Below are positions 19,773 to 51,529 of a stretch of 64,000 nt of DNA, in pieces. Below the pieces are notes generated by a model. It was not told the origin of the DNA. It did not search any database and saw nothing but the letters and a program-made list of their open reading frames with translations. Position 1 is the first letter of the stretch. Each line of letters starts with the position of its first letter. The stretch is taken from positions 62,001 through 126,000 of IMG/VR virus record IMGVR_UViG_3300020188_000808. One strand, 5' to 3'. The position numbers and the translations under genes were made by a program.

Positions 19773-22700
19773 TTATATTCCCCCCGGACCGTAGCCATTT
19801 TCGCCACCATCATAGAAGCCATCACTTCCTTCAAAGTCGTCTTGACTTTCAGTTAGCATCATTGTATCCATATTGCCGTTAAAGTATGCTTGTGCCATCA
19901 TCATACCACTTGGTATCTTAGTAAAGTGCATAGGTACCGGAATATTAATAGCTAATCCACCTGTATTTGATATGTGATTTAAATCACTAAATTTACAAGT
20001 ACCTGCTGTAACTGCGTTTGCCGCTACGTTTGAACCACCACCACTAATTCTACTCTGTAAATAAGCCGCAATAGCCTTCTGTGTTGGTACAATGTTATTA
20101 CTATTAGCAACAAATGTTTGTTCTTTTGAGAATTCTCTAATTACAGCATTTGTTCCACCTAATATAAACGCACCAAGTCTAAGTTCGTCTAGTCCTTCTA
20201 GGTTAAACTGTGAAGCATTAATAGTAACAATACCTGTACTTTGCTCAACTTTAAATAATTCGCCAACTCTAAAGTTACCATCTTGGTCTGTAGAAGCGTA
20301 GAATACTCTACCACCGTTGTACTCTTGAGCTTCATATGATTGCTCTGGTGGATTAATATTACCATACCCGTCTGTATATAACAATGGATATGCAGTATCT
20401 GCAAAGTTACCTGTACCAATGTCTAAGAAATCATGGAATGTTAATCGTACCTGACTATAGTTCTGTCTAATATTTGCCGGAGTAGCATGTTCTGGTGATT
20501 CTTGCACTCCCATATTAGGACTAATTGTAAGTTTTGCAACTGCATTAGGAGCCGCACCTGACAATATTGTAGCAGTACCAACTTTATAAATTACATCATT
20601 AATACCATCAACTCTAAAGTTATCACCCGGACTTGGAATTAGTGTTAAATCACTAACAATAATTTCTCCGCCAATTTGGAATAAATCTGCATAGCCGTCA
20701 CCGGTAATTGTTACTTGGTTAAATTTAGTATACAATGCACCTCTGTTTGTAAAGTTAGGTTGTCCTAACACTCTATTTTTAATTCTAACTTGATACGTTA
20801 CTTCTGTAGTTTTTTGTGTATCATGAATATGCAATGAGGGTGGTACCCCTACATTATAACCACTACCTGGATCAGTCATTGTAAATGATTCAATGCGTCC
20901 TGTTGTTACAGGGAACGCTCTCATTTTTGCTTTAGCACCATATTTAATTGCCGCTAAGTTTGCTGTTGCCGTTGCAGGACTAATCATAAATCTTGGTCCA
21001 CTTGTTAGTGTCATTGGACTAATCTTTGGTCTATAGTTTTGTGCATTTAATAAAGGTATAGCAGGTTTACTATTCCAAACATGACCACCATCACCGTATA
21101 AAATATCTCCTTGCACACTGATTGCCATAAACAATCCATCACTATATGCAAGACCAAATACTCGTGTTCCAATAAAGTTTGGATCTGAAACAATTAACCA
21201 TTCTGAGTTTAATGCTCCAGTGTCTTTGGCTGTAAAGCTAATGTAGAATGTACTGTTTAATCCAAACGAAGCACTAGTAGTACCTGCTACGGAATTAATC
21301 ATTGTAGTTGAAGGATCAAATACAAATGTAGCAGTTCCGTTTGGTTGACATGCCGCTACAAATCTTCCATTACCAAATGCAAACCCTGTTACGTTATATG
21401 TTGTTGGACAAACTCTAGTTGCAGTAGTCCAACTTTGGCCATCGTTAATACTTTCAATAGCGGTTCCGTCTTCTTTGACAATCATCCATTTACCATTTCC
21501 GTAAGCTAAGAATTTTTGTCCTGTTCCAAATCCTGTATTAGTATAAGTCCAAGCAGTTCCGTCTGTTGTAGTAATTGCAATTTCATCACTATCGTCTGCT
21601 ATTGCTATAACTGTGTGCGAAGTTGTTGAATATGATCCTTCAACTATACTTACATAGTTGTGTGCATTAATAGAGTATGCTGTTGAACCCCATGCTGTAC
21701 CAGCAGTTGACAAGTTAGCTTTGCTACCATTGCCTAGTGCAATAAAGTATTTTAATTTACCTTTACATTTGACAATACAATTTGGTCTTACAAAGTCAGC
21801 ATCAATGATCGCCGCTGTCCATTGATCGCCTGCTTCGTTACTGTAAATAGCTTTGTCATCTCCTGTTGAAGGAAATGCAACCATTGTTGTTCCTGTTGCT
21901 GAGAAACAATCCTGCCAAGCAGTTGCTCCGTATCCTGTAGCAAAACCTTCTTCTGCATATGGAGGAGCTTCAACTTCCATTCTTGATTCAATTCTATAAG
22001 TTGTTGATCCGTCTAGTGTTGTTGTAATTGGCCAACCTGGAACTAAATGGTCCCAACCACGTTTGCCATCTGACTCGCGTAGTACATTAATCTTTTTAGT
22101 TGTAGTAAAGTATTCGTCAATTATTCCAAACTGTCCAACGCCTTCACCTTCTTCAATGATAATCTTCATTGATTCGCTAATTGCGTTTACTTGAAAAGTT
22201 AAGTTTCCGCCGCCAAAATTACCAATGTCACTATCAAGTATAGTAATAGTGTCGCCAACTCTATGACTGTGGCCACCGTTTGTAATTGTAACAGTTGGAG
22301 TTCCTGTACCGTCAATAGTAATTGTAAACGTACCTACAGTATCTTTTGCAAACGGGTTATCTGATGTTGCAGTAACTCCTGTATATGTGTACGGAGCATC
22401 AAGAACGTTACCAACCCAACCTGGATTTGCACCCGGTAATCCTGTAATCGCTGTTATTGCTCTACCAACATAATATTCTGGTCCGTTGTTATCTGACTGT
22501 GCAATAGTAATTGAAATACTATCACCGCCTTGTGCAGAGTTTCTTATACCTGTAATATGTCCTCTACCACCTGGTGTACTTGAATCACCTGGATCAAGTA
22601 ATCTAACTTCACTAATTGCACCGTTTCTTACATCTGTTGATGTATTATCAACTCCAACACCACTACCTGAACCTGTAATTGCAAAGTTTGCATTAGTATA

Positions 22701-25097
22701 TTCTTCACCTGCGTGTGTAAATCCTAGTGCAAAAATTTGGTTAGCGTTACTGTAAACTGTTGGTGCTTTTGCATTATAATATCTGTTGTTAATAGTTGCT
22801 GTAATTGGAGTTTCACTTACTAATTCTCCTTCAGCAAACGATCCATATTTTCCGTATGAGTTGTTACCATTAGTAGCACGTAGCTTTCCACCTGCTGTAC
22901 AATAATAACCAATATGACAATAATATGTAAACACAGATACAAGCTCTGCTCTACCGTCTTTGTTAGCCCATACACCAATACCATCACTAATAACTTGTGT
23001 AAAGTCGTTAGCAACAATTGATTTGTTTCCGCTGTTGTGCAAAGCACCGTCAATTTTTAATCCAACACAAGCAGTACCAATAGTTGTTACGTTTTGTACA
23101 TATGTTGATTTAGATGTAATCCACACACTTGAGTCGCCTGGTCCTGAACCTGGATCAAGTGCAACAAATGCTCCACTTGCTGGAACTTGTGCTCCATAAG
23201 TATCTGGAGTTCCTAGTGTACCTGTTAGTCCTTCAAGAGTCATATTTCTAATTCCACAACCATTTCTAACTTGGAACATATCTTGACTTTCAGAACCTTC
23301 TTTTGGTCTAACTGTAGTACTTCTTAATTCGTCGCCAACAACAGCAACGCCTGCTGGAACTTTAATAGGAAGAACTTCTTCGTAAATCCCTGTGCTAACA
23401 AAAATTGTTGCTGGTGCTCTATTAGCTTGATCTGCTAAAATATATTGTGTGGCATATTTAATTGTTCTAAACGGACTTGTTGGTGCTAATCCAGCACCAG
23501 ACACATCATGGCCCGAAGTTGCAACATAGAATACTTTAGCTACTTGTCCTAATGCTTCCCATTGTGCGGAATCGTCAATAACTTTTATTGCATCTCCACT
23601 ATTACCAATAGCAAGTCTTTCGTGAGTAGTTCCGTTGTGTGTTCTAAGATCACCTCTGTATTCCATTACGTTGCCAGGAGCACCTTGAATATGTTTAACC
23701 CAGTAACTATTTGTAGAATCTAGTGCTGGTTCAACCAATGATGAATCGTCAGCTTCGTGTGCTTGAATACATTTCCAAGTAGTACCTGCTTGAACTACAA
23801 TATCACCTAATACATAATCAGCTGTTTCAATCCATTCACCTCTGTATGCTACTCCAGTTATTACTAACTGCCAATACATTGAAACACTACCGTTTAAACT
23901 TCTAGTCTCACCTGGATCGTAGTATCCTTCGCTTTCAGGATCTAATGCATCTGGTTTTTGGTTAAGACTGTCTTGTACAGCAATATAAACAAAGCCACCG
24001 TTTCTAACTACTTCACCTGTTTTGTATGCTGTTGAAGCTGACCATTCGCCCTTCATTGCATAACCGGTAATTACTAATTCCCAATCATATAATCCTTGTA
24101 AACTTTCACCTTCGTAGAAAACACCAGTTACACTTGGAGGACTACCTAAGTTGTTTGTCATTGATGTATAGGTATATCCACCATAACGTACAATGTCACC
24201 TGGTTGGTAACTTGTAGAATTACTCCACTCTGCTTCAAATCCTAATCCTGGTAACCAAAGATCAAATTTACTTTCGTCAAATGTTGCTAATGATGCATGA
24301 AATTCTTTACATCTCCACATTGATGGTCCGTATCTAACTAAATCACCAACTTTATATCTTGTTCCTGAAGAGTCGCCGTTGTCTTGCCAAAACCCTGTGT
24401 ACTCAATTCCGTGTAGTACAACGTCCCATTTAGTAAGATCGTCTTCTAATCCTAAAAGTGCAGTTTCTGCAGAGGTATGTCCTTCATTACATCTATAAAC
24501 AATAGCACCATATTTTACAACATCGTCATCTTTGTATCTTGTATTAGGAGCCCAGTCAATTCTATAATTATTACCTTGAAATACAGTTTCCCATTTGTCT
24601 TGGTCTTGTTCAAGTCCAGCAATAGTAGAACTAGAAGTATGTTCTTGAATAGCTTTGTAAACAATTCCACCGTAACGTACAACGTCACCAATTCTATATC
24701 TTGTTAATGCTGACCATTGTGCGGACCAATTAGGCGTTGATGCATATGCTAAAAGTTTATCAACATCATCTGTAATACCATCTGTAGCACTACTTCCTGA
24801 AACGTGTTCGTCAGTTACACGATAAATTACACCATTATATTTGACTAAATCGTTAATTCTATATCTAGTTTCAATTTGCCAATTGCCTCTCCATTGGCGA
24901 CCGTCTGCCATCAGCAACCATTTAGGTGTTGCCGCAGTTAAATCTGTTTCAAAACTAGTTTGATCTGATAAGTGACCAACCATACAAACATAAACGTTAC
25001 CGCCATGTCTAATAATATCATCTTTGATATATGTTGCGCCTGCAAGCCAAACGTTTTTCCAAGTATATCTTATTCGTGCTAGATTAAATTCAGCCAT
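19773..25097 (-). CDS. Giant tail-fibre/virion structural protein, paralog of 13609..19731
   Basis: 1774 aa. Collinear N-terminus (MAEFNLARIRYTWK), repeats and C-terminal GGRVFYASTDQDGNFRVG. Confidence 0.8.
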   Translation of the reverse strand: MAEFNLARIRYTWKNVWLAGATYIKDDIIRHGGNVYVCMVGHLSDQTSFETDLTAATPKWLLMADGRQWRGNWQIETRYRINDLVKYNGVIYRVTDEHVSGSSATDGITDDVDKLLAYASTPNWSAQWSALTRYRIGDVVRYGGIVYKAIQEHTSSSTIAGLEQDQDKWETVFQGNNYRIDWAPNTRYKDDDVVKYGAIVYRCNEGHTSAETALLGLEDDLTKWDVVLHGIEYTGFWQDNGDSSGTRYKVGDLVRYGPSMWRCKEFHASLATFDESKFDLWLPGLGFEAEWSNSTSYQPGDIVRYGGYTYTSMTNNLGSPPSVTGVFYEGESLQGLYDWELVITGYAMKGEWSASTAYKTGEVVRNGGFVYIAVQDSLNQKPDALDPESEGYYDPGETRSLNGSVSMYWQLVITGVAYRGEWIETADYVLGDIVVQAGTTWKCIQAHEADDSSLVEPALDSTNSYWVKHIQGAPGNVMEYRGDLRTHNGTTHERLAIGNSGDAIKVIDDSAQWEALGQVAKVFYVATSGHDVSGAGLAPTSPFRTIKYATQYILADQANRAPATIFVSTGIYEEVLPIKVPAGVAVVGDELRSTTVRPKEGSESQDMFQVRNGCGIRNMTLEGLTGTLGTPDTYGAQVPASGAFVALDPGSGPGDSSVWITSKSTYVQNVTTIGTACVGLKIDGALHNSGNKSIVANDFTQVISDGIGVWANKDGRAELVSVFTYYCHIGYYCTAGGKLRATNGNNSYGKYGSFAEGELVSETPITATINNRYYNAKAPTVYSNANQIFALGFTHAGEEYTNANFAITGSGSGVGVDNTSTDVRNGAISEVRLLDPGDSSTPGGRGHITGIRNSAQGGDSISITIAQSDNNGPEYYVGRAITAITGLPGANPGWVGNVLDAPYTYTGVTATSDNPFAKDTVGTFTITIDGTGTPTVTITNGGHSHRVGDTITILDSDIGNFGGGNLTFQVNAISESMKIIIEEGEGVGQFGIIDEYFTTTKKINVLRESDGKRGWDHLVPGWPITTTLDGSTTYRIESRMEVEAPPYAEEGFATGYGATAWQDCFSATGTTMVAFPSTGDDKAIYSNEAGDQWTAAIIDADFVRPNCIVKCKGKLKYFIALGNGSKANLSTAGTAWGSTAYSINAHNYVSIVEGSYSTTSHTVIAIADDSDEIAITTTDGTAWTYTNTGFGTGQKFLAYGNGKWMIVKEDGTAIESINDGQSWTTATRVCPTTYNVTGFAFGNGRFVAACQPNGTATFVFDPSTTMINSVAGTTSASFGLNSTFYISFTAKDTGALNSEWLIVSDPNFIGTRVFGLAYSDGLFMAISVQGDILYGDGGHVWNSKPAIPLLNAQNYRPKISPMTLTSGPRFMISPATATANLAAIKYGAKAKMRAFPVTTGRIESFTMTDPGSGYNVGVPPSLHIHDTQKTTEVTYQVRIKNRVLGQPNFTNRGALYTKFNQVTITGDGYADLFQIGGEIIVSDLTLIPSPGDNFRVDGINDVIYKVGTATILSGAAPNAVAKLTISPNMGVQESPEHATPANIRQNYSQVRLTFHDFLDIGTGNFADTAYPLLYTDGYGNINPPEQSYEAQEYNGGRVFYASTDQDGNFRVGELFKVEQSTGIVTINASQFNLEGLDELRLGAFILGGTNAVIREFSKEQTFVANSNNIVPTQKAIAAYLQSRISGGGSNVAANAVTAGTCKFSDLNHISNTGGLAINIPVPMHFTKIPSGMMMAQAYFNGNMDTMMLTESQDDFEGSDGFYDGGENGYGPGGI

Positions 25098-30804: not shown

Positions 30805-31230
30805 TTAGTCTGCTGGATCGTCTGACTCAAAGTCATCAGCATCTGGTGCGCCATCAACGTTGTCGATAACAGCATCATCACCTGCTTCTTCCATTTCAAC
30901 AGTAGCACCTGTACCAGTGAAGTCCCATTTGATCTTATCGCCTGCTCCTTCAAGTTGTACCAAGTGTGCAGTAATCTTAGTTACTTGCTTTGGAGTTGCT
31001 CCGTCTAAGACTGTAATAGTCATTTCGCCTGCCGCAACTGCCGCACTTGCTTTATTAACTAAGAAACAATCTTTTGTAGCTGTACCGTCTGTGCAACGGA
31101 ATTTTTTACTTCCAAGTTGCTTAACAATCCAGCCGTTTACTGATCCAGTTCCATTGTGAAACTGTACTTTAATTTCGTCACCGCCTGCTGTAGGTGGGCC
31201 AAAATATCTTTTGTTTAGTGGTCTTCCCAT
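30805..31230 (-). CDS. Hypothetical late protein (MGRPLNKRYFG...)
   Basis: 141 aa. Strong RBS, late promoter at 31318-31324, acidic tail. Confidence 0.7.
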   Translation of the reverse strand: MGRPLNKRYFGPPTAGGDEIKVQFHNGTGSVNGWIVKQLGSKKFRCTDGTATKDCFLVNKASAAVAAGEMTITVLDGATPKQVTKITAHLVQLEGAGDKIKWDFTGTGATVEMEEAGDDAVIDNVDGAPDADDFESDDPAD

Positions 31231-31328
31231 TTGTTTTCTCCTTTAAAACGTTCTAGGTTTACGCAGTGGGTCAGTTCTGCATAAGTCCGCAACATGCGGC
31301 ACGATTATTGACACAAGTATTTATCTGA

Positions 31329-31736: not shown

Positions 31737-31752
31737 ACAAGTATTTAGTCAT

Positions 31753-31780
31753 AAAAATAGGCCCAATTATTGGGCCTATT
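31753..31780 (-). terminator. Intrinsic terminator after the transporter gene
   Basis: ATAGGCCCAA/TTGGGCCTAT stem followed by a T-tract on the minus strand. Confidence 0.8.
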
Positions 31781-31786
31781 CTGGTT

Positions 31787-32752
31787 TTACATTCCTATTT
31801 GATTAGGAACAATGATGTAGTGAATAGCAAGTACCACTCCAACTGATGCGCCTAAGCCAATCATCATCTTAAAGAAGTCTTTGGTCACCAACGGAAATAC
31901 TGTCTTAAACTTTTCCTTGCCTGTCATAGTTGCCATAGCAAGTTCACGTCCACATAGTAGTCCTACAAACACCCACGTTGTTGACATAGGTATATCGTTT
32001 AGTTCTTTAAAGAAGAATAAGATCAACCAGTACACACCATCAATGATAGTTGCTGAACGCACATATCTTGTGTTGTGTTTTTCTAGTACAATCTTTTGGA
32101 TCTTACCACCACCCTCTCTAAACATAAATGCTAGTCCTACAACAAACACAACGCTCACTAGGATCATTAGGTCCCATGGAACTTGTCTGGGAAGGAACAC
32201 AGCAATATTTGCCATGTCATGACTTAGCCAAGTAAACCACAGGAAGCCTGTTGTTACCCATTGTGCTATTCGCCACGCTTTCTTATGTTGTTCTTTGACA
32301 GGCTTTGCTTCGTCTAGTAGTTTAGTAACTCCTATCCAAATAATGTATGCCGCGACTGCCGCGACAGCATAGCCCATCATGCTTTTCATAAGCATCTTCT
32401 CTAGTACAAAGGTACTTGCGAAGGCACTTAATACTAAAAAAGAAGTACTAACTGGTACTCCTATTCGTGTAAGTATTAATAATAGTCCTGGTGCCATTGC
32501 GTGATACCATTGTATCTCTTGGAACGGTATTTTGTTTAGTCGTCCATAACTAATATCTCCACCGTTGGTATACCAACCATACCAAAGTGTATACAGTAGA
32601 ACAGCCGAAGCCGCTCCCCACATCGCTTTCCAATTAAATTTTTCGTTATTACTTGCGATCCATGTACCGAGAGTCTGTACACTATCATTTGCGATAACTG
32701 CGTAACCTGCGAACAGGAAACCTACAGCCATCCATAGGGTGAGTGCGTCCAT
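31787..32752 (-). CDS. PiT-like (phosphate transporter-related) membrane protein
   Basis: Start moved to ATG 32752 (RBS GGAG at 32761-32764), 321 aa. Multiple TM segments. IANDSVQTLGT and LSHDMANIAV resemble the two PiT signature repeats. Confidence 0.65.
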   Translation of the reverse strand: MDALTLWMAVGFLFAGYAVIANDSVQTLGTWIASNNEKFNWKAMWGAASAVLLYTLWYGWYTNGGDISYGRLNKIPFQEIQWYHAMAPGLLLILTRIGVPVSTSFLVLSAFASTFVLEKMLMKSMMGYAVAAVAAYIIWIGVTKLLDEAKPVKEQHKKAWRIAQWVTTGFLWFTWLSHDMANIAVFLPRQVPWDLMILVSVVFVVGLAFMFREGGGKIQKIVLEKHNTRYVRSATIIDGVYWLILFFFKELNDIPMSTTWVFVGLLCGRELAMATMTGKEKFKTVFPLVTKDFFKMMIGLGASVGVVLAIHYIIVPNQIGM

Positions 32753-32862
32753 TATTATTTCTCCTCTGCTTGCCGCTTTTACCACGGCGCTCACATACTA
32801 AGACAAGGCTCAACGTTGCCCTGCTGGAACATTATTGTTCGCAATTATTTAGTGAATAGAAG

Positions 32863-32880
32863 ATTACAGTTTTGTTACAG
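32863..32880 (-). promoter_or_regulatory. Pho-box-like direct repeat
   Basis: Minus strand CTGTAAC-AAAA-CTGTAAT, 11-bp period, upstream of the PiT-like gene. Resembles the PhoB consensus CTGTCAT-A(A/T)A(T/A)-CTGT(C/A)A(C/T). Confidence 0.55.
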
Positions 32881-32884
32881 TGAC

Positions 32885-32912
32885 AAAAAAAGCACCCGAA
32901 GGTGCTTTTTTT
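32885..32912. terminator. Bidirectional intrinsic terminator
   Basis: AAAAAAAGCACC-TTCG-GGTGCTTTTTTT on the minus strand (UUCG loop). Confidence 0.85.
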
Positions 32913-32914
32913 GG

Positions 32915-33226
32915 TTACTTCTCTTGTGCTGGGAAGTCTAATGGATTCCTTGGTTTAAACTGAATGTTCATATCGGTTAGATATGGATCGCAACCTTTGT
33001 CTTCTAAACGCATTGCGAGCCACATCTCAAATGACTCCTTGTCTTCAAACGTACGAGTAAACTCGTAACTCTTGAACGGTAATTCCCTATTGAACGTTAC
33101 TACTACTTCGTTCGCGTTTGCGTCTGTAACAAATCCAAACATCACTGTTACAAACATTACAAGTCCTATAAGCATTACACTCAATGCTCCGGGACAATTC
33201 TTTTCATTACAACTTGTACCTATCAT
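32915..33226 (-). CDS. Hypothetical protein with N-terminal membrane anchor
   Basis: Best RBS spacing gives ATG 33226 (track start 33238). Hydrophobic segment LSVMLIGLVMFVTVMFGFV. Confidence 0.55.
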   Translation of the reverse strand: MIGTSCNEKNCPGALSVMLIGLVMFVTVMFGFVTDANANEVVVTFNRELPFKSYEFTRTFEDKESFEMWLAMRLEDKGCDPYLTDMNIQFKPRNPLDFPAQEK

Positions 33227-33249
33227 CATAGTCTCCAAATTTTAGTCAT

Positions 33250-33332
33250 AAAAAAAGGCGACTTGCTGTAGCCTTTAAGCATCGCTACTTGGGTCGCCTT
33301 CCGATTGTGTGTTTACTCTATTAGTAAACAAT
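33250..33332 (-). ncRNA. Candidate ~83-nt small RNA or attenuator leader
   Basis: Follows TTGACA-N16-TATAAT. 8-bp 5' hairpin (33310-33330) and a long terminator hairpin (33255-33300) plus U-tract. No evident ORF. Confidence 0.5.
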
Positions 33333-33338
33333 AATATT

Positions 33339-33366
33339 ATTATACAAGTATTTAGTAATTTGTCAA
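33339..33366 (-). promoter_or_regulatory. Sigma70-type promoter with nested late motif
   Basis: TTGACA (33366-33361), 16-nt spacer containing CTAAATA, TATAAT (33344-33339). Confidence 0.75.
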
Positions 33367-33479
33367 CCTAGTTTCGCACTTTTTGACAGAATCTAGCACT
33401 GAATATTTTTATGGGTATATAAAAATAACTAATGACACTATTACTAAAGTAATAAGCCATTTGTGTCCATCGTGGAGTT

Positions 33480-33776
33480 TCACACGCAACCAGTCGGCTT
33501 GGGGAGCCCACCATACTTGGCAATCTGTTTCATTGGACCGGTCTTCCAAGCATCATACAGGCCTTTTGCTTTGCGATCCATGCCCAATGCTTTACCAAAG
33601 TCCTTTACTCGTGGCACCATTGATGTTTCTTCATACATAGAACGTGCTAACATAATGTGGCTTACCTGTTCTTCGGTAAGCGTCTTGTCATCTTCACGAG
33701 CCATAGAGTGCATTACTTCCTCACTCCAATCACTCATTGACACGAGGAATCCGTCACCGTCTCTTTCAATACTCAT
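33480..33776 (-). CDS. tusE: TusE/DsrC-family sulfur relay protein
   Basis: 98 aa. N-terminal DGDGFL...DWSEE and C-terminal GLPKPTGCV with penultimate Cys. Confidence 0.9.
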   Translation of the reverse strand: MSIERDGDGFLVSMSDWSEEVMHSMAREDDKTLTEEQVSHIMLARSMYEETSMVPRVKDFGKALGMDRKAKGLYDAWKTGPMKQIAKYGGLPKPTGCV

Positions 33777-33955
33777 ACTTCATTTCTCCATAAGTTGTTT
33801 TTTGCAATGTAATCAAAGTTCCAACGCCCTGCGTCAGGTCTCTTGATTATGTCCTCTTTCTTAAACGTGTTGCGAGGGTTAACAACATTATCCTTGTTAC
33901 CGCCAATGGTGTGGTCTAACATCATCTGCTTTCCATACTTGATCCTCTTGATCAT
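33773..33955 (-). CDS. Small hypothetical protein (60 aa)
   Basis: ATG 33955 preceded by a doubled RBS (AAGGAG-AAAGGAG). Stop overlaps the tusE start. Confidence 0.55.
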   Translation of the reverse strand: MIKRIKYGKQMMLDHTIGGNKDNVVNPRNTFKKEDIIKRPDAGRWNFDYIAKNNLWRNEV

Positions 33956-34097
33956 CTCCTTTCTCCTTGTTATTTGCAGGGTCACCTGCTTCCAAATTAT
34001 CCAAGTCAGGATTCTTTTTTCCGTGTGGATAACGCTTGCCATCCTTATGGTTACCTGACTCGGTTCCTACTCCACTTATTCTTATCTTTTTCTTCAT
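33897..34097 (-). CDS. Possible leaderless small protein (66 aa)
   Basis: ATG 9 nt after TATAAT (34112-34107). Overlaps the next ORF by 59 nt, so may be non-coding. Confidence 0.35.
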   Translation of the reverse strand: MKKKIRISGVGTESGNHKDGKRYPHGKKNPDLDNLEAGDPANNKEKGDDQEDQVWKADDVRPHHWR

Positions 34098-34106
34098 AGT
34101 AATACT

Positions 34107-34134
34107 ATTATACTATCGTAGCAGATAATAACAA
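34107..34134 (-). promoter_or_regulatory. Sigma70-type promoter of the tusE unit
   Basis: TTGTTA (34134-34129), N16, TATAAT (34112-34107). Confidence 0.6.
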
Positions 34135-34172
34135 CCAGGTAATTTTTATGGGTATATAAGAAAAATTTAGTC

Positions 34173-34206
34173 AAAAAAATAGGCCCAATGCGAACAGAGG
34201 GCCTAT
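34173..34206 (-). terminator. Intrinsic terminator after csp
   Basis: ATAGGCCC/GGGCCTAT stem plus T7. Confidence 0.8.
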
Positions 34207-34219
34207 AGTTGTAGTTCTA

Positions 34220-34420
34220 CTACTTGACTGATAAGTTTATAGCAGAAGGGCCTTTTGGACCATCCTGTGTTTCAAACTCTACAGTATCGCCTTCATTCAA
34301 CGAGTGTAAGCCTGCGGCTTCTACTGCTGAAATGTGTACGAAGATATCTTTGTCTTCGGTAGCGATAAATCCAAAACCTTTAGTGGCATTGAACCATTTT
34401 ACTTTTCCTTGATTACTCAT
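34220..34420 (-). CDS. cspA: Cold-shock domain protein
   Basis: 66 aa. [15 protein letters not shown] (RNP1) and DIFVHISA (RNP2). Confidence 0.95.
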
Positions 34421-34538
34421 GTTTTTCCTTGTTAGTGTTTATTTTGAGGAAGTTTGTATCTAATATTAGGGCGGGAGGGTTGTTATTTCTACTGCGTCTT
34501 GTTCTTATTACTGTCTTGTCTCAATTGTATTTAGTCAC

Positions 34539-34563
34539 AAAAAAAACTGCATAAAGCAGTTTG
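34539..34563 (-). terminator. Intrinsic terminator
   Basis: AAACTGC-TTTAT-GCAGTTT followed by a T-tract. Confidence 0.75.
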
Positions 34564-34646
34564 GTTTTGTTTAGTTGTTATATGTATTTAGCTGGTCGAC
34601 AAAAAAGGTGCTTATAATAGGTCTTTTTGCGAGTCTAAATTTAAGT

Positions 34647-34861
34647 ATAGCAAAATAGGGAGGACTTGGGTACACCTCCAAGTACGGACCGGAATACCAT
34701 TCCTAAACCGTACAACCTATCCCCGCGGGTTAGTGCGATGTGACTCAGCGTATTTCTACTACCAAGCCTGGGTACCACCCCTGGACAGTCAAGTTCGACC
34801 CTTCTGGTAAAGGCCTCTTCCTTGCACTACAAACAAAAGCTAATTACTCTTTTGTTGCTAT
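34647..34861 (-). ncRNA. Candidate ~215-nt structured non-coding RNA
   Basis: Own sigma70-type promoter. 7-bp 5'/3' closing stem, nested stems with G-U pairs and a GAAA loop. GC-rich, no ORF. Confidence 0.6.
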
Positions 34862-34867
34862 GTAATT

Positions 34868-34896
34868 AATATAACATTGTTATTAACAAAGAGCAA
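34868..34896 (-). promoter_or_regulatory. Sigma70-type promoter for the candidate ncRNA
   Basis: TTGCTC (34896-34891), N17, TATATT (34873-34868). Confidence 0.55.
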
Positions 34897-34936
34897 TCAC
34901 TTTGTTTACCAAAATATATAAAATGGAATTTTAGTC

Positions 34937-34967
34937 ATAAAAAAGCACTCCGGAGAATGCTTTTTAT
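34937..34967. terminator. Intrinsic terminator after pqqA
   Basis: Minus strand AAAAAGCATTC-TCCG-GAGTGCTTTTTT (UNCG loop). Confidence 0.85.
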
Positions 34968-34988
34968 GTTTCAATGTATAAACAAGTA

Positions 34989-35063
34989 TTACTTGTTCAT
35001 TACATACATCGTCACTTCAAATCCAAAACGCATTTCTGTTGCTTGAGGTTTAGTCCATTTCAT
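34989..35063 (-). CDS. pqqA: PQQ precursor peptide PqqA (24 aa)
   Basis: Hand translation MKWTKPQATEMRFGFEVTMYVMNK*. W.KP...R.GFEVTMY with the E-x3-Y motif. RBS AGGAG 6 nt upstream. Confidence 0.9.
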   Translation of the reverse strand: MKWTKPQATEMRFGFEVTMYVMNK

Positions 35064-35153
35064 AATAATCTCCTAATAATATGTGCAACTTGCACACTAT
35101 TATTTAAACATATTACAAAGTAAAAGTCATGCAGATAATCATTAAAAGGTCAT

Positions 35154-35185
35154 AAAAAAAGGGCGACAAATAAATGCCGCCCTTT
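35154..35185 (-). terminator. Major capsid gene terminator
   Basis: AAAGGGCGGC-ATTTATTT-GTCGCCCTTTTTTT. Confidence 0.85.
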
Positions 35186-35210
35186 AATCTTATTCCGTTA
35201 AGACTATGTC

Positions 35211-36380
35211 TTAAGAGAAAGTAGGTGTAGATGTAAAGCTAACTGTACCTAAGTAGTCTGCCGCATTACCTAGAGACGATGCTGTGTTTGACAACTCAAC
35301 ATATCCGTATCTAGTCATAAAGCTAACTACTGGCTCAAAGCTATCTGGATCTAACACTACGCCACTGCTCATTAATGGAATGTATGGGCAGTAGAACGCT
35401 GGTGCGTCTGATTCAGAAGAACCTTTGTAACCAACTAGTACCGCTGTGTCATCTGCCGCGTAACTATCAACATAAACTTTCATAGCTGAATTTAATGTTC
35501 CAACCATTTTAGTGTTTGTTGGTGCTTCGAATGAACCTTCAGTTGTTCTTGCGAACGCTGAAGTAGTTGCACTCTGAAGTACAGTTAACGCTTGTGGAGA
35601 TACCACTGCGTAGTTACCAGCACCACGACGTGTACGCTGAGCAATAACGTTAGCAACACGGTTGATCATTACAGCTAAAGCCGCATGTTCGTCACCAACG
35701 AATGTTGCAGTACCGCTAACAGCAGTCTGATCGTAGTTTTGGTTGTTAGTTGATCCAGCTAATGCACGTAAAGAAGCTAATACTTCTTGGTCGATCTCAG
35801 CAGTAATCTCTTGGGCTAGTGCCGCCATGATTTCTGCTTCGATGTCAATGCCTTGCTGTGCTTGAGCATCTTGAGCCGCTTCAAAAGTCCATCTAGCTGA
35901 TAGCTTTCTGGTTTTTGCTTCGACTGTTTGCTTTAAGATCTGAATTGACAATCTCTTGCCTGCCGCACCTTCAAGAGCCGCTGTTGCAGATCCTTTTGGT
36001 GATGCATCAGTAGCGTTACCTGAGTAAGCCGCCGCGATCTTAAATGGTGATAGTGCTTCTTCACCAACTTCGTTACCATCAGATGTATCTGAGTAACGTA
36101 CTCTTAATGTGTGGATTTGACCCACTGGACCTGTCATAGGCTGTACACCGACCAATTCGTTGGCGATAACAGTTGGCATGACACGTCTGATTACTGGTAG
36201 GATAACTCTATTTAGAGTTGCAACATTACCGGCGCTTGTGCTTCCGGCTGTAGCAGTCTCATTCAACCACTTGCGTGTGTTTTCAAGAGTGCTTGCCATG
36301 ATTGCTTTCTTATTGCCTTGAAGGCCTTCTAAAAGTGCAACCTTGGTATCCTGCCAGCGACTTTCTAGTAGTTCTGACAT
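35211..36380 (-). CDS. gp23: Major capsid protein, T4 gp23-like
   Basis: 389 aa. VIRRVMPTVIANELVGVQPMTGPVGQIHTLR, KTRKLSARWTFEAAQD, FYCPYIPL, FMTRYG. Confidence 0.95.
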   Translation of the reverse strand: MSELLESRWQDTKVALLEGLQGNKKAIMASTLENTRKWLNETATAGSTSAGNVATLNRVILPVIRRVMPTVIANELVGVQPMTGPVGQIHTLRVRYSDTSDGNEVGEEALSPFKIAAAYSGNATDASPKGSATAALEGAAGKRLSIQILKQTVEAKTRKLSARWTFEAAQDAQAQQGIDIEAEIMAALAQEITAEIDQEVLASLRALAGSTNNQNYDQTAVSGTATFVGDEHAALAVMINRVANVIAQRTRRGAGNYAVVSPQALTVLQSATTSAFARTTEGSFEAPTNTKMVGTLNSAMKVYVDSYAADDTAVLVGYKGSSESDAPAFYCPYIPLMSSGVVLDPDSFEPVVSFMTRYGYVELSNTASSLGNAADYLGTVSFTSTPTFS

Positions 36381-36390
36381 TATTTTCTCC

Positions 36391-37494
36391 TTATTTCAAT
36401 CCTGCAAGTCGTCTAATGTCAACAATATTATTTGTTGATTCGACGCTTACACTACTAACGTTAGTTTCTTTGTTGCCTGTGATTTCTTTTGCCTCTGACT
36501 CAGTCAATTTAGCCTTTTTCTTTTCCGGAGTCTTCCCGTCAATAACGGCAGTAATATACTTGTCAAACGAACTTTTCAATTTGTCTGTCTGTACACTTTC
36601 CAGTAAGTCATTCATAATCTCACGTTGATCCTTGCTCAAAGGACCAGTTAATTCGTGCATTACTTCTTTTCTCTTAGTCGCTTCTACAAGTTTTGCAATC
36701 TCTGCATCTCTTGTAGCAATGACTTTCTTCGCTTGTTCAGCTACACTTTTTGCTTCTTCAACTGTTTTGTCTTTCAACGCAACAACTTTCATTAGCTTAG
36801 ATGTTTCTGATTTTTCATTTAAGTAACTATTAGTATACTCATTTGCAAACGTTTCGAAAATCTTACGACCAAAATCGTTTTTACGTGCTGAATCAATATC
36901 TTCTTTCAGTGCTGTAATTTCCTTTTTAAGGCCTTTACTTACTGTTTCAGTTACTAACTCTGCACTTCTTTTAACAAAAGTAGTTTTAACTTTTGCTAAG
37001 TGTTCTTTAGCTTCACGTACTAAACGTACTTTCGTTTCAGCTAAATCACGTTTATCTTGATGGAACTCTGCAATTTCTTTTGCTAAAGCTTCTACTACAA
37101 ATTCTTCAAGTTTTCCAAATTTCTCTGATACAACTTTTTGATCTTCATGTAGTTCTCCAACTTCCTTCTTTAGCTGATCAAATACAAAACCTTTTAGCAT
37201 ACCTGCGTTTTCACGCATCGCAACAGCGTATTTTGCTCTTGCTTCTGCTAATGCTTTTCTATCTTCAGCAAATTCAGAAATTTCTTCGCTTAGTTTGTCG
37301 TTAACTAGTGAGTCAACAGCTTCAATCATCTGAGCCTTATCATGCTCATACTTTGAAGCAAACTCTTCGCGAAGTTCAGCGGTTACAGCAAGTTTATTTT
37401 CGTTAACTTGCTTGTCCCATGCCTCTTGGATGTCAGCTTTAATCTCTTCAGAAAGTACATTGTTTTCAAAAAGTGATTTCAGTGCTTCCAACAT
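36391..37494 (-). CDS. gp22: Prohead core scaffold protein, gp22-like
   Basis: 367 aa coiled coil between protease and MCP. C-terminal RRLAGLK. Confidence 0.85.
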   Translation of the reverse strand: MLEALKSLFENNVLSEEIKADIQEAWDKQVNENKLAVTAELREEFASKYEHDKAQMIEAVDSLVNDKLSEEISEFAEDRKALAEARAKYAVAMRENAGMLKGFVFDQLKKEVGELHEDQKVVSEKFGKLEEFVVEALAKEIAEFHQDKRDLAETKVRLVREAKEHLAKVKTTFVKRSAELVTETVSKGLKKEITALKEDIDSARKNDFGRKIFETFANEYTNSYLNEKSETSKLMKVVALKDKTVEEAKSVAEQAKKVIATRDAEIAKLVEATKRKEVMHELTGPLSKDQREIMNDLLESVQTDKLKSSFDKYITAVIDGKTPEKKKAKLTESEAKEITGNKETNVSSVSVESTNNIVDIRRLAGLK

Positions 37495-37507
37495 TATGGT
37501 CTCCTTA

Positions 37508-49105: not shown

Positions 49106-49528
49106 CTATAATTTGCGTAATTCTTCTTTAAGAATCTTTGATCCGCCAACTCTAACATTAATGATTCCGTTGTAGTAATCATCTGTTTCAAGTACTCTGC
49201 GTTCAAACTGCTCTCGTGCCTCTAAGTAACTTGCTAAGCCTCTGCTTTTACAATAATATAATATTTCTCTGGTGAAATTTTTCTGGCCTAATTCTTCAAC
49301 GTCTCTTAATAAGTTATCACTGGAGCCCCAATAGTCTCTCCAATCTGATTCTTTAGTTCCACGTCTTTTGTTTTTTCTGCCTTTGAGCGGTGGCTTAGTT
49401 GTCTTAAACTTAGCTAATTTTTTGCCTATGTACTTACGATTGTTAGTTTTATTAGTGATTAAGTAAACAAATGCTTCGCAATCTGTTGGAAGTTCGTCTA
49501 TTTTTTTACTTTTGTAAGTCCACTGCAT
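49106..49528 (-). CDS. GIY-YIG family nuclease (stand-alone catalytic domain)
   Basis: 140 aa. AFVYLITNKTNNRKYIG, YWGSS, LEAREQ, YYNG. Confidence 0.85.
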   Translation of the reverse strand: MQWTYKSKKIDELPTDCEAFVYLITNKTNNRKYIGKKLAKFKTTKPPLKGRKNKRRGTKESDWRDYWGSSDNLLRDVEELGQKNFTREILYYCKSRGLASYLEAREQFERRVLETDDYYNGIINVRVGGSKILKEELRKL

Positions 49529-49556: not shown

Positions 49557-49760
49557 TTACTCTTGATTGTGGTTCTTCTTGTTAGATGTAAAGTCGTCCA
49601 TGATTTCTACTCTGCGTGTAGAGCACAAACGACGAATTTCGCTTAACCACCTACGTGCTTCACGTTTAGTACGTTCGCTTTTGCGAATTTCAAACGCTTC
49701 ATTGGCTTTATAGTATTGCATATAAGCCTTAGTAAGTAAATCATGCGTATCGTCAGTCAT
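49557..49760 (-). CDS. Small hypothetical helical protein
   Basis: 67 aa, translationally coupled to gp46. Confidence 0.65.
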   Translation of the reverse strand: MTDDTHDLLTKAYMQYYKANEAFEIRKSERTKREARRWLSEIRRLCSTRRVEIMDDFTSNKKNHNQE

Positions 49761-51529
49761 TATCGTATTTCTATATCGTTATCATAACTAGTAAAGCCAT
49801 TTTCCTTAACAACTCTAAGTACATTTGTAACTCTACCAATTAGTTCATCTTTGTGTGAGATTAGATAAACGTTTTTACTACGCTCTCTAGCCATTTTCTT
49901 AAGAATACTAATAGAGCTTTCAACACCTGCGGTATCCATACCACTATCAATAAGCTCATCAATGAATAGTAAGTTAATGTTTTGATATAAACTTTCCCAC
50001 ACATCACGGAATGACCAACTCATACCAAGTATAAGTCTGTTACGTTCACCTCTACTCAAGTTATCAAAGTCTAAGTCCTGTCCTAGTTGTTGTATTTCAA
50101 CTGTTAGGTCATTTTTAAACACTACAGTATGTGGTAACCCTATTTTGTCTAAGTAATATGTAAGTCTGTTGTTTAAGTATGCTAAGTTTTGTTCAATAAT
50201 CTTCTTACGAATAAAACTATCTTTGTTTGTTAGTAACTTATATAAAAAGTCTTGATGTTCTTTAGTACTAGTCAATTCATTTACTGTTTCCCAGTTAAGT
50301 TCTTGAATAGCAGTTTCTTTTAAATCATCAATTTGTTCTTGGTAAGGGTCAACTTCATCTTGTTTTGCCTGCAACGTAAGTTTCAAATTTTCAACATTAT
50401 GTTGATGCTCATATGCTTCTTTGGCATTTTCGTAAAATGTGTTAGGCTTACTTTCAACGTCACCAAGGTCTTCAATCTTTTTAACTACCTTTTCAAACTT
50501 TTCAGCAATCTCAATTAGGTATGTGTGTGCATCGCCATAATCGGTTTGCAGTTTATCTTTAAGTTCTTCTAATTTTTCATCATGTAAGTCTTGTCCACAA
50601 GCATAACACTTTGCATGTTCTAAGTCATCTAGTTCTTTACCAGACTTTTTCATGTTCTTGTCAGCTTGTTCTAAAGCACGTTCAATAGTAGCTCGTTCTT
50701 TGATCAAGTTATTGTGTTTAGTTGTTTTCTCTGACCAAGAACTTAACAAGTCATGTGCTTCTAGTTCAGCATCAATATCTAACTTTTCTAATTCTTTAAT
50801 TGCTTTGGCAAGTTTATCACAGTCTTGTTTGTTTTGAGAGATCCATGCTTTACGTCTAGTGTGCAATCTATCAATATTTTCTGTAATTTTTTCGTTACTT
50901 GCTGTTACTGCCGTGAGTCTAGCAGTTTCTTCTGTGAGTTGGTCCTTAACAATCTTAGATTGCTCTCTAAGTTTATCAGCCTTCTCACTTAATATAGTAA
51001 TACCTAATAGTTGTTCAATGATTGCACGTTGATCGTTGCTTTTTAAAGATAAAAACGGTTCAGTATATGTGTTAAGTGCAAGAATATGTTTGAACATCTC
51101 ATGACTCATACCAAGTAGTGTGTTAATATCTTCTTGTGTCTTGCGACTATCACCTTGACTTTCGTCTGTAATCTCTTGATCAGTACCATCAATGCTAAAT
51201 TTTAACAAATTAGGCTTACGTCCACGTTCAATATGATAATTTCTACCATCTTTTTCAAACGTGAGTGTTACTAACATCGCTTTGTTATTAGTTTTGTTAA
51301 CTAAATTATCTTTGCGTATGTTAGTTAGTGCTTGGCCGTACAGGGCGTAGGATAATGCGTTGATTATCGTAGTTTTACCTGTACCGTTACGGGAACCAGA
51401 ATCGTCACCTCCTTGATCTAAGTTTTCACCAAGCACTAACGTTAGTTGTTCTCTATCAAAGTCAACTCCTTGTGTAGAATTACCTACACTCATGAAATTT
51501 TTGACTGTTAATTCTTTAATTTTAATCAT
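49760..51529 (-). CDS. gp46: Recombination endonuclease ATPase subunit, gp46/SbcC/Rad50-like
   Basis: 589 aa. Walker A NGTGKTT, zinc hook CYAC, signature LSRGE, Walker B LFIDE. Confidence 0.95.
   Translation of the reverse strand: MIKIKELTVKNFMSVGNSTQGVDFDREQLTLVLGENLDQGGDDSGSRNGTGKTTIINALSYALYGQALTNIRKDNLVNKTNNKAMLVTLTFEKDGRNYHIERGRKPNLLKFSIDGTDQEITDESQGDSRKTQEDINTLLGMSHEMFKHILALNTYTEPFLSLKSNDQRAIIEQLLGITILSEKADKLREQSKIVKDQLTEETARLTAVTASNEKITENIDRLHTRRKAWISQNKQDCDKLAKAIKELEKLDIDAELEAHDLLSSWSEKTTKHNNLIKERATIERALEQADKNMKKSGKELDDLEHAKCYACGQDLHDEKLEELKDKLQTDYGDAHTYLIEIAEKFEKVVKKIEDLGDVESKPNTFYENAKEAYEHQHNVENLKLTLQAKQDEVDPYQEQIDDLKETAIQELNWETVNELTSTKEHQDFLYKLLTNKDSFIRKKIIEQNLAYLNNRLTYYLDKIGLPHTVVFKNDLTVEIQQLGQDLDFDNLSRGERNRLILGMSWSFRDVWESLYQNINLLFIDELIDSGMDTAGVESSISILKKMARERSKNVYLISHKDELIGRVTNVLRVVKENGFTSYDNDIEIR

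What the first reader, a model, noticed from the sequence alone, without database searches (positions are those of the whole stretch)
34937..35107. Phage-encoded PqqA: a RiPP cofactor precursor as an autonomous late transcription unit
Seen: 24-aa ORF MKWTKPQATEMRFGFEVTMYVMNK (35063-34989), below the ORF-track cutoff, with RBS AGGAG, late motif TTAAATA (35107-35101), a 5' hairpin (35082-35096) and its own terminator, directly after the capsid gene. No pqqB-E in this window. Known: PQQ is made from the Glu and Tyr of the PqqA E-x3-Y motif by PqqD/E/B/C, and PqqA is consumed stoichiometrically. From memory, the EMRFGFEVTMYVMN variant most resembles Methylophilaceae PqqA. Inference: the phage supplies the substrate peptide to host PQQ enzymes to sustain PQQ-dependent dehydrogenases (e.g. 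methanol oxidation) during late infection, or decoys PqqD. It also hints at the host. I know of no description of phage pqqA but cannot check the literature.
Basis: partly seen in the sequence, partly recalled or inferred. Interest (0 to 1): 0.92.

Follow-up and report, generated by a model that had tools for sequence, protein, structure and literature searches.

The report
Phage-carried PQQ precursor gene (pqqA)
A jumbo T4-like phage of methanol-eating bacteria (Methylophilaceae) carries its own copy of pqqA, the 24-residue peptide from which the cofactor PQQ is made. Viral pqqA has been reported before, but here it turns out to be common, and mostly unannotated, across phages of this host family.

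Summary
A 24-aa ORF (35063..34989, minus strand) scores well above the curated cut-offs of both PqqA profiles and has the Glu16/Tyr20 pair. It sits between the terminator of a gp23-type capsid gene and its own terminator, behind an AGGAG ribosome-binding site and a T4-type TAAATA motif.

The phage is a jumbo T4-like phage: sequence-identical IMG/VR contigs reach 268 kb. No pqqB-E and no PQQ-dehydrogenase gene is in the window.

The same orphan gene occurs in cultured Methylophilales phages (Venkman, MEP301, P19250A, MEP401/402, Melnitz), where the ORF itself is not annotated. It also occurs in at least 240 IMG/VR contigs, always complete and without pqqB-E in the DNA held for them; the 127 viral loci that were clustered fall into at least 16 gene contexts. 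It is under purifying selection (dN/dS about 0.18).

Coutinho et al. 2020 reported it in a Lake Baikal T4-like virus, and a 2026 paper lists it.

The most likely role is to supply substrate to the host PQQ enzymes during infection. That role is inferred, not shown.

The parts
35211..36380 (-). Major capsid protein gene (T4 gp23 type), immediately upstream of the pqqA unit
   Evidence: PF07068 Gp23 at 329 bits and phrog_138 at 341 bits. The closest phage capsids are from jumbo phages (Phosso, Vibrio 2.275.O, PA5oct, GAP32) at 66-71% identity.
35158..35185 (-). Intrinsic terminator of the capsid gene, which isolates pqqA from capsid read-through
   Evidence: 11-bp stem with 6 G-C pairs, followed by a T-run.
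35135..35145 (-). Conserved upstream box TTAATGATTAT, 26 nt before the GTTTAAATAATA motif
   Evidence: Invariant, with identical spacing, in the window, L093, L113 and L121, including the two relatives where the cassette is inverted. No function was tested.
35098..35109 (-). Promoter-like motif GTTTAAATAATA containing the T4-type late core TAAATA (35106-35101)
   Evidence: Invariant in four relatives. TAAATA is about 15-fold enriched in intergenic DNA on the coding strand, and the enrichment is strand-specific. It is absent from nearly all host pqqA upstream regions: TAAATA in 9 of 113, TTTAAATA in none.
35082..35096 (-). 5'-proximal hairpin TGTGCAAGTTGCACA in the predicted leader
   Evidence: It is part of a 17-nt insertion absent from L093, L113 and L121. 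Eight IMG/VR contigs share the exact 43-mer that includes it.
35070..35074 (-). Ribosome-binding site AGGAG, 6 nt before the ATG
   Evidence: It is unpaired in the centroid fold. The same AGGAGATTATT-ATG junction is seen in several host copies. 215 of 216 viral copies have an RBS-like motif.
34989..35063 (-). pqqA coding sequence, 24 aa, with Glu16 and Tyr20
   Evidence: TIGR02107 39.1 bits (cut-off 20) and PF08042 43.8 bits (cut-off 21.1). dN/dS is 0.18 across 115 distinct viral sequences.
34937..34967 (-). Intrinsic terminator of pqqA (hairpin plus T-run)
   Evidence: Predicted in both the MFE and centroid folds. Each relative has a hairpin plus T-run at this position. In L113 and L121 it is one hairpin lying between the convergent pqqA and capsid genes.

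Best explanation
This is an orphan auxiliary metabolic gene. It is a host-derived pqqA that a jumbo T4-like phage of Methylophilaceae has placed under a phage TAAATA-type (presumably late) promoter, as a self-contained unit just after the capsid gene.

Proposed mechanism:
- The 24-residue product is the substrate of the host's PqqD/PqqE, which cross-link Glu16 to Tyr20. PqqB, PqqC and peptidases then complete PQQ.
- Each PQQ molecule consumes one PqqA, whereas the enzymes are catalytic.
- PqqA is therefore the one pathway component that must be made continuously. Once host transcription fails, a phage copy would keep PQQ available for the periplasmic methanol dehydrogenases (XoxF/MxaF) that power the cell.
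- This is the same logic as cyanophage psbA.

Shown here: family membership, an intact gene and signals, phage context, host family, selection on the peptide, and recurrence across many phage lineages.

Inferred: translation, processing by host enzymes, expression timing and any fitness benefit.
For: 1. PqqA profiles are matched at about twice the curated cut-offs, over the full model length, with E16/Y20 present.
2. The gene is flanked on both sides by phage genes: gp23, protease, portal and baseplate. It sits next to the capsid gene in the relatives L093, L113 and L121 (capsid about 82% identical), and in further capsid-bearing relatives L286, L302 and L335.
3. In L113 and L121 the cassette is inverted yet keeps the same promoter box, motif and RBS, so it is autonomous.
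4. The promoter region is phage-type and unlike host pqqA upstream regions, whereas the RBS plus ORF resemble host copies.
5. Selection acts on the peptide. There are 115 distinct nucleotide versions. W, P and R outside the search pattern are invariant, with P using 4 codons and R 5. dS is about 0.9 and dN/dS 0.18 on codons not constrained by the search.
6. The gene recurs widely. tblastn finds complete pqqA ORFs in Venkman, MEP301, P19250A, MEP401/402, four Melnitz isolates and a Manatee Spring podovirus. All 242 inspected ORFs are complete and 23-25 aa long. The 127 viral loci that were clustered (120 IMG/VR, six phage records and the window) fall into at least 16 gene-context clusters.
7. 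None of these viral loci has pqqB-E, whereas the same queries find pqqB-E in 15 of 120 host loci, which serves as a positive control.
8. The host family uses dosage of this gene: 3-12 pqqA copies against one pqqBCDE (PMC4109929), and most host copies are orphans too.
9. The phenomenon is host-specific. The IGFEVTMY pattern, the core seen in the Acinetobacter pqqA of L007, finds only 2 viral contigs, and their peptides are otherwise of the Methylophilaceae type. tblastn of 50,697 phage records finds no other true phage hit.
10. The same AMG role was proposed independently for a Lake Baikal virus (PMC7678222).
Against: - There is no expression, peptide or PQQ measurement for any phage copy.
- Hosts already have several pqqA copies, so an extra one helps only if host supply collapses during infection. 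That is assumed, not shown.
- If expression is truly late, there may be little time for a multi-step, slow pathway to yield useful PQQ.
- In small siphoviruses the gene sits in the recombination/early region and is often antisense to its neighbours, so timing is not uniform across lineages.
- The pqqA promoter variant (TTAAATA) is a minority form of the motif.
- The rest of this roughly 268-kb genome could not be inspected for xoxF or pqqB-E.
Confidence: 0.65

Rival explanations
1. Decoy or inhibitor. The phage peptide occupies host PqqD/PqqE without productive turnover. That would shut down PQQ synthesis, or spare SAM and reductant for the phage.
For: The leader positions that should contact PqqD (residues 4 and 6-8 of the 23-aa form) are more variable in phage copies than in host copies.
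Against: - Every substrate-defining feature is retained across 115 distinct viral sequences: W, P and R are invariant, the residue before R is Glu or Asp in all, and the C-terminal tail is close to the host form. The E-x3-Y core is intact in the phage copies found by tblastn without any pattern. A peptide that looks exactly like the substrate should be processed as one.
- Cutting the cell's main energy-yielding dehydrogenase would hurt phage production.
- A Lake Baikal virus population carries methanol dehydrogenase together with pqqA, which argues for boosting rather than blocking.
Confidence: 0.07
2. Functionless passenger or recombination homology. The sequence would be a recently captured scrap of host DNA, or an attP-like target copy used by temperate phages to integrate at one of the host's many pqqA loci.
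For: Hosts have many dispersed pqqA copies that could serve as capture or integration sites. In the Venkman, MEP301 and P19250A-type phages the ORF lies in an intergenic gap, antisense to or converging with neighbouring genes, near recombinase genes. Similarity to host DNA barely extends beyond the ORF.
Against: - dN/dS is 0.18 with saturated synonymous change, so the copies are old and the peptide is under selection.
- All 242 inspected copies are full-length with a start and a stop, and 215 of 216 have an RBS.
- The promoter has been replaced by a phage-type one.
- The window phage and Melnitz are T4-like. T4-like phages are lytic and have no attP (established knowledge of the group).
- The best host match is only 91% identical, with at most 21 identical bases in a row.
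Confidence: 0.08
3. A different role for the peptide or transcript. Examples are a regulatory or signalling peptide, or an mRNA that titrates a host regulator of pqqA expression, rather than a PQQ precursor.
For: Nothing direct. Function is untested, and the leader has lineage-specific structure (the 5' hairpin insertion).
Against: High synonymous divergence with conserved amino acids points to selection on the peptide, not on the RNA. The conserved residues are those of the PqqA profile. The restriction to phages of PQQ-dependent methylotrophs fits the cofactor role.
Confidence: 0.08

Closest known systems
Bacterial PqqA (TIGR02107 / PF08042), especially the multiple orphan pqqA copies of Methylophilaceae
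   Same: Length is comparable (24 aa against 23-25), and the core EMRFGFEVTMYVMNK with the Glu/Tyr pair is identical. The RBS junction matches several host copies. Like most host copies, it is not next to pqqBCDE.
   Different: It is encoded in a phage structural module behind a phage-type TAAATA motif instead of the host's sigma-70-like pqqA promoter and long leader. It has an extra Lys at position 2 and Gln in place of the first Ala of the host's Ala-Ala leader pair.
Viral PqqA of Lake Baikal population VP_266 (Coutinho et al. 2020, PMC7678222)
   Same: A T4-like virus of about 35% GC with a predicted Methylophilaceae host. It carries PqqA without the rest of the pathway and was proposed as an AMG for methanol oxidation.
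   Different: The Baikal contigs also carry methanol dehydrogenase; none is in this 64-kb window. Sequence relatedness to the window could not be tested, because those contigs are not in the searchable collections. That paper stated that phage P19250A lacks these AMGs, but an unannotated pqqA is present there.
Cyanophage psbA (D1) and similar AMGs that replace the fastest-turnover component of a host pathway
   Same: A single host-derived gene for the consumable part of an energy-yielding system, widespread across unrelated phages of one host group, and relying on host partners for function. This is a comparison from general knowledge.
   Different: The product is a 24-aa RiPP precursor destroyed in making a cofactor, not a structural subunit. 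There is no experimental evidence of expression or benefit yet.
T4 late promoter (TATAAATA)
   Same: An A/T-rich octamer-like core, TAAATA, strongly enriched upstream of structural genes on the coding strand.
   Different: Here the consensus is (A/C)TAAATA(C). The pqqA copy reads TTTAAATA and has an extra conserved box 26 nt upstream. No gp55/gp33 homologues were looked for or seen in the window.

Membership tests
PqqA (TIGR02107 / PF08042) | Profile-HMM score above the curated cut-off over the full model | tested here: met
   TIGR02107 gives 39.1 bits against 20, matching model positions 1-21 of 21. PF08042 gives 43.8 bits against 21.1, matching 1-19 of 19.
PqqA (TIGR02107 / PF08042) | Short peptide (about 20-40 aa) with the conserved Glu-x3-Tyr pair that becomes PQQ | tested here: met
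   24 aa, with Glu16-Val-Thr-Met-Tyr20. The numbering matches the Glu16/Tyr20 of the M. extorquens peptide described in PMC10906245.
PqqA (TIGR02107 / PF08042) | Encoded with pqqBCDE in the same operon | tested here: not met
   No pqqB-E in the window. This is typical rather than defining in the host family: 105 of 120 Methylophilaceae pqqA loci are also orphans, and those genomes have 3-12 copies per pqqBCDE set.
PqqA (TIGR02107 / PF08042) | Bound by PqqD, cross-linked by PqqE and converted to PQQ | not testable with these tools
   Needs biochemistry or complementation.
Phage auxiliary metabolic gene | Lies inside a genuine phage genome with phage genes on both sides, not at a contig edge or in a host fragment | tested here: met
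   The gp23 capsid, protease and portal lie upstream; tail and baseplate genes lie further along. Synteny is conserved in IMG/VR relatives, and sequence-identical contigs reach 267,783 bp.
Phage auxiliary metabolic gene | Host homologue in the predicted host, with purifying selection on the phage copy | tested here: met
   Genome hits for this type are nearly all Methylophilaceae. dN/dS is 0.18.
Phage auxiliary metabolic gene | Expressed during infection and alters host metabolism | not testable with these tools
   No transcriptome or culture data were available.
T4-type late transcription unit | Late promoter consensus TATAAATA a short distance upstream of the transcript start | tested here: inconclusive
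   The TAAATA core is present and is enriched and strand-specific in intergenic DNA. However, the pqqA copy is TTTAAATA, a minority variant, and timing is not measured.

The most novel reading that the evidence does not exclude
pqqA may be the signature auxiliary gene of phages infecting Methylophilaceae, as psbA is for cyanophages. It would have been acquired or retained independently by sipho-, podo-, myo- and jumbo-phage lineages, because PqqA is the only stoichiometrically consumed part of PQQ synthesis and becomes limiting once host transcription stops. If so, the 23-25-aa ORF is also a simple host-prediction marker that standard gene callers and phage protein-family databases currently miss.
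Probability: 0.45. Interest if true: 0.7.

Novelty: new member of a known kind. Interest (0 to 1): 0.55.

Why it matters
Methylophilaceae (OM43 in the sea, LD28/Methylopumilus in lakes) are major consumers of methanol, and their energy metabolism depends on PQQ-dependent dehydrogenases.

A cofactor-precursor gene carried by many of their phage lineages would mean that infection actively maintains methanol oxidation. That matters for carbon-flux estimates.

It would also be a rare case of a virus encoding a RiPP precursor that relies wholly on host tailoring enzymes.

Practically, the gene is missed by annotation pipelines:
- It has no PHROG family.
- It is unannotated in GenBank methylophage records, or overlapped by a spurious antisense ORF.

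Cultured systems exist in which the hypothesis can be tested directly: Venkman or Melnitz on OM43 strain H5P1, and P19250A on IMCC19250.

Tried and rejected
- A megablast of 33000-37500 against 50,697 phage records found no match, so relatives had to be found by protein and pattern searches.
It was replaced by degenerate DNA patterns.
- These patterns force the FGFEVTMY residues, so selection was measured on the unconstrained codons only.
- The exact 11-mer promoter motif is not repeated in the window, and the sigma-70 scan gave no convincing promoter for pqqA. The TAAATA core analysis replaced both.
- The two 'Acinetobacter phage MD-2021a' hits are bacterial chromosome contigs with a full pqqABCDE operon, mislabelled as phage. 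They were discarded.
- A homologue search with the neighbouring TusE/DsrC-like protein returned 395 metagenomic relatives but no organism names, so it gave no independent host signal.
- A PqqC search of IMG/VR gave one hit, on a giant-virus MAG contig. It is uninformative and has limited sensitivity.
- PHROGs has no family matching PqqA.
- The attP and decoy readings were considered and ranked low, as set out under the rival explanations.
- Structure prediction was not attempted, because a 24-aa peptide alone would be uninformative.

Full report
**What is there.**
- The capsid gene (35211-36380) ends in a strong intrinsic terminator at 35185-35158.
- Next come a small hairpin (35096-35082), AGGAG (35074-35070), and a 24-codon ORF (35063-34989) encoding MKWTKPQATEMRFGFEVTMYVMNK.
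- A hairpin plus T-run terminator closes the unit at about 34967-34937.
- The 171-nt unit folds with both hairpins, an unpaired ribosome-binding site and a z-score of -3.3.

**Is it PqqA?** Yes, by sequence.
- NCBIfam TIGR02107 scores 39.1 bits against a curated cut-off of 20, and Pfam PF08042 scores 43.8 bits against 21.1. Both cover the whole model.
- Glu16 and Tyr20 are in place. These are the residues that PqqE cross-links in the Methylorubrum peptide (PMC10906245).

**Is it in a phage?** Yes.
- The upstream genes are a gp23-type capsid, a scaffold-like protein, a gp21-type prohead protease and a gp20-type portal.
- Elsewhere in the window are baseplate proteins (gp25, gp53 and hub types), gp46/47-like nuclease subunits and a SegE-type homing endonuclease.
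- The capsid is 66-71% identical to those of jumbo phages: Phosso, Vibrio 2.275.O, PA5oct and GAP32.
- The exact 43-mer spanning the hairpin and the start codon occurs in eight IMG/VR contigs, the largest 267,783, 186,342 and 116,647 bp. One 9-kb contig (L348) is 100% identical in capsid, portal and Csp. The window therefore comes from a jumbo T4-like phage that is already present, unannotated, in IMG/VR.
- No close DNA match exists among 50,697 deposited phage genomes.

**Is the rest of the pathway present?** No.
- Pfam scans of the long ORFs on the coding strands (nearly all of those of 90 aa or more) found no PqqB, C, D or E and no PQQ-dependent dehydrogenase.
- A tblastn with Acinetobacter and Methylophilaceae PqqB-E found nothing significant in the window.
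- The same queries recover pqqB-E in 15 of 120 Methylophilaceae loci, so they work.

**Host.**
It returned almost only Methylophilaceae: Methylotenera, Methylophilus, Methylopumilus, OM43 and Methylobacillus. Several loci often came from one genome.
- Most host copies are orphans. This matches the published 3-12 pqqA copies per single pqqBCDE set in this family (PMC4109929).
- The window's 37% GC and a freshwater-2 RNA motif are compatible with a streamlined freshwater member. That is only a hint.

**Transcription unit.**
- The exact 11-mer is unique in the window, but its core behaves like a promoter element. On the coding strand there are 19 TAAATA in 4.7 kb of intergenic DNA against 13 in 47 kb of coding DNA, and only 4 on the other strand in intergenic DNA.
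- These copies sit in front of structural genes, as T4 late promoters do.
- In three relatives at about 82% capsid identity (L093, L113, L121), pqqA is again next to the capsid gene. They share the same GTTTAAATAATA, the same upstream box at the same 26-nt distance, an RBS and a terminator.
- In L113 and L121 the whole cassette is inverted, so that pqqA converges on the capsid gene. That is good evidence that the unit carries its own promoter.
- Host pqqA upstream regions look different: sigma-70-like -10 elements and long leaders, TAAATA in only 9 of 113, and no TTTAAATA. The AGGAGATTATT-ATG junction, however, is shared with several host copies.
- So the RBS and ORF are host-derived and the promoter is the phage's.
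- The 5' hairpin is a 17-nt insertion specific to this sub-lineage.
- 'Late' remains an inference from the motif and the neighbourhood.

- A tblastn of the peptide against deposited phages found complete ORFs in Venkman, MEP301, P19250A, MEP401, MEP402, four Melnitz isolates and a Manatee Spring podovirus.
- In six of these ten records nothing is annotated at the site. In the Melnitz records and the Manatee Spring record the annotated 'hypothetical protein' there is an ORF on the opposite strand where the region was inspected (Melnitz-1 and Manatee Spring).
- The only other hits are bacterial contigs mislabelled as Acinetobacter phage.
- All 242 inspected copies are complete 23-25-aa ORFs, and none of the loci has pqqB-E in the DNA held.
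- The 127 viral loci that were clustered (the first 120 IMG/VR loci, six phage records and the window) fall into at least 16 gene-context clusters.
- Of 216 copies with enough flank, 215 have an RBS-like motif and 80 lie antisense to both neighbours.
- The IGFEVTMY pattern, the core seen in the Acinetobacter pqqA of L007, finds only two viral contigs, and their peptides are otherwise of the Methylophilaceae type. PHROGs has no PqqA family.

**Selection.**
- Among 115 distinct viral nucleotide sequences, Trp, Pro and Arg outside the search pattern are invariant, with Pro using four codons and Arg five. Variation concentrates in leader positions 4 and 6-8.
- On codons not constrained by the pattern, dS is about 0.89, dN 0.16 and dN/dS 0.18.
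- The peptide, not the RNA, is what is conserved.

**Literature.**
- Viral PqqA is not new. Coutinho et al. 2020 described it, together with methanol dehydrogenase, in a T4-like, 35% GC, predicted Methylophilaceae virus from Lake Baikal, and proposed the AMG role (PMC7678222).
- A 2026 study lists viral pqqA, pqqD and pqqE among phosphorus-cycling AMGs (PMC13188868).
- The Baikal paper states that P19250A lacks these AMGs, and the Melnitz paper mentions PQQ only as a medium supplement.
- No paper in the searchable library notes the gene's presence in the cultured methylophages.

**Mechanism.**
- The most economical reading is substrate supply. One PqqA is destroyed per PQQ made, the enzymes are reusable, and the host family itself multiplies pqqA rather than pqqB-E. 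A phage copy would therefore keep the cofactor supply going when host transcription declines.
- A decoy would not need to keep every substrate residue.
- A passenger or attP copy would not show this selection, nor a replaced promoter in a T4-like phage, a group that is lytic.
- None of these readings has been tested at the bench.

**Verdict.**
- The gene's identity and the host hint are supported. The function is plausible but inferred. The claim of novelty is not upheld.
- The gene is a new member of a known kind.
- The breadth of the phenomenon, and its invisibility to annotation, give it moderate interest.

Noticed in passing
window 34649-34854 (-): A structured, relatively G+C-rich non-coding stretch just downstream of pqqA matches the Rfam manA RNA motif over the full model. 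It scores 50.3 bits, below the gathering score of 55.2, with E 8.7e-12 for the 851-nt search. Part of it is conserved in relative L113.
   Followed up: partly
window 31228-31301 (-): Rfam freshwater-2 RNA motif above the gathering score (51.5 against 49.9 bits), in the gap between two small genes. It hints at a freshwater origin.
   Followed up: no
window 33480-33776 (-): A 98-aa TusE/DsrC-family sulfur-relay protein (PF04358, 79.5 bits; phrog_17249) ending in PKPTGCV. It has 395 metagenomic relatives, mostly also about 98 aa. It is probably another auxiliary gene.
   Followed up: partly
window 34220-34420 (-): A 66-aa cold-shock protein (CSD, 86 bits; phrog_729) as a separate small cassette with a 568-nt upstream gap.
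   Followed up: no
window 31744-34942 (-): 31744, 33241, 34166, 34530, 34930: The element TTTT(A)TGACTAAA occurs five times, against 0.5 expected by chance. At least four copies abut a terminator T-run, and three of the five continue as CTAAATA. The 31.3-35.2 kb region therefore looks like a string of terminator-promoter-delimited mini-cassettes: pqqA, the manA-like RNA, csp, tusE and small ORFs.
   Followed up: partly
window 13609-19731 and 19773-25097 (-): Two giant proteins (2,040 and 1,774 aa) carry 4 and 6 CBM5/12 carbohydrate-binding repeats. They are probably fibre or host-recognition proteins.
   Followed up: no
window 4747-6558 (-): A 603-aa carbamoyltransferase (NodU/CmcH type; Carbam_trans_C 195 bits, Carbam_trans_N 88 bits) lies among tail-region genes.
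   Followed up: no
window 49106-49528 (-): A SegE-type GIY-YIG homing endonuclease (117 bits) lies next to the gp46/gp47-like nuclease genes (49760-52538).
   Followed up: no
L002 2967-3062 (Melnitz-1) and L005 2067-2195 (MW202481): In these GenBank records the annotated 'hypothetical protein' at the site is on the strand opposite the pqqA ORF, so the real gene is unannotated. In Venkman, MEP301, P19250A and MEP401/402 nothing is annotated there. In Melnitz, pqqA sits just before a tRNA-Leu.
   Followed up: partly
L007 (CAKLQF020000010.1) and CAKLQH020000055.1: Records named 'Acinetobacter phage MD-2021a' in the phage collection look like bacterial chromosome. In L007 the flanking genes include ppk, fur and a full pqqABCDE operon; the second record was not inspected.
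   Followed up: partly
L113 1474-1545 (+) and L121 (same arrangement): In two relatives the whole pqqA cassette is inverted relative to the capsid gene, with a single hairpin lying between the two convergent genes. L093 has an extra 28-aa ORF between the capsid gene and pqqA.
   Followed up: yes
L248, L249 and several loci: A minority of viral PqqA peptides have other cores, for example EHRIGFEVTMYVMNK, or tails such as ...YINASN...YIANR and ...YIHNR. These may belong to phages of other methylotrophs.
   Followed up: no
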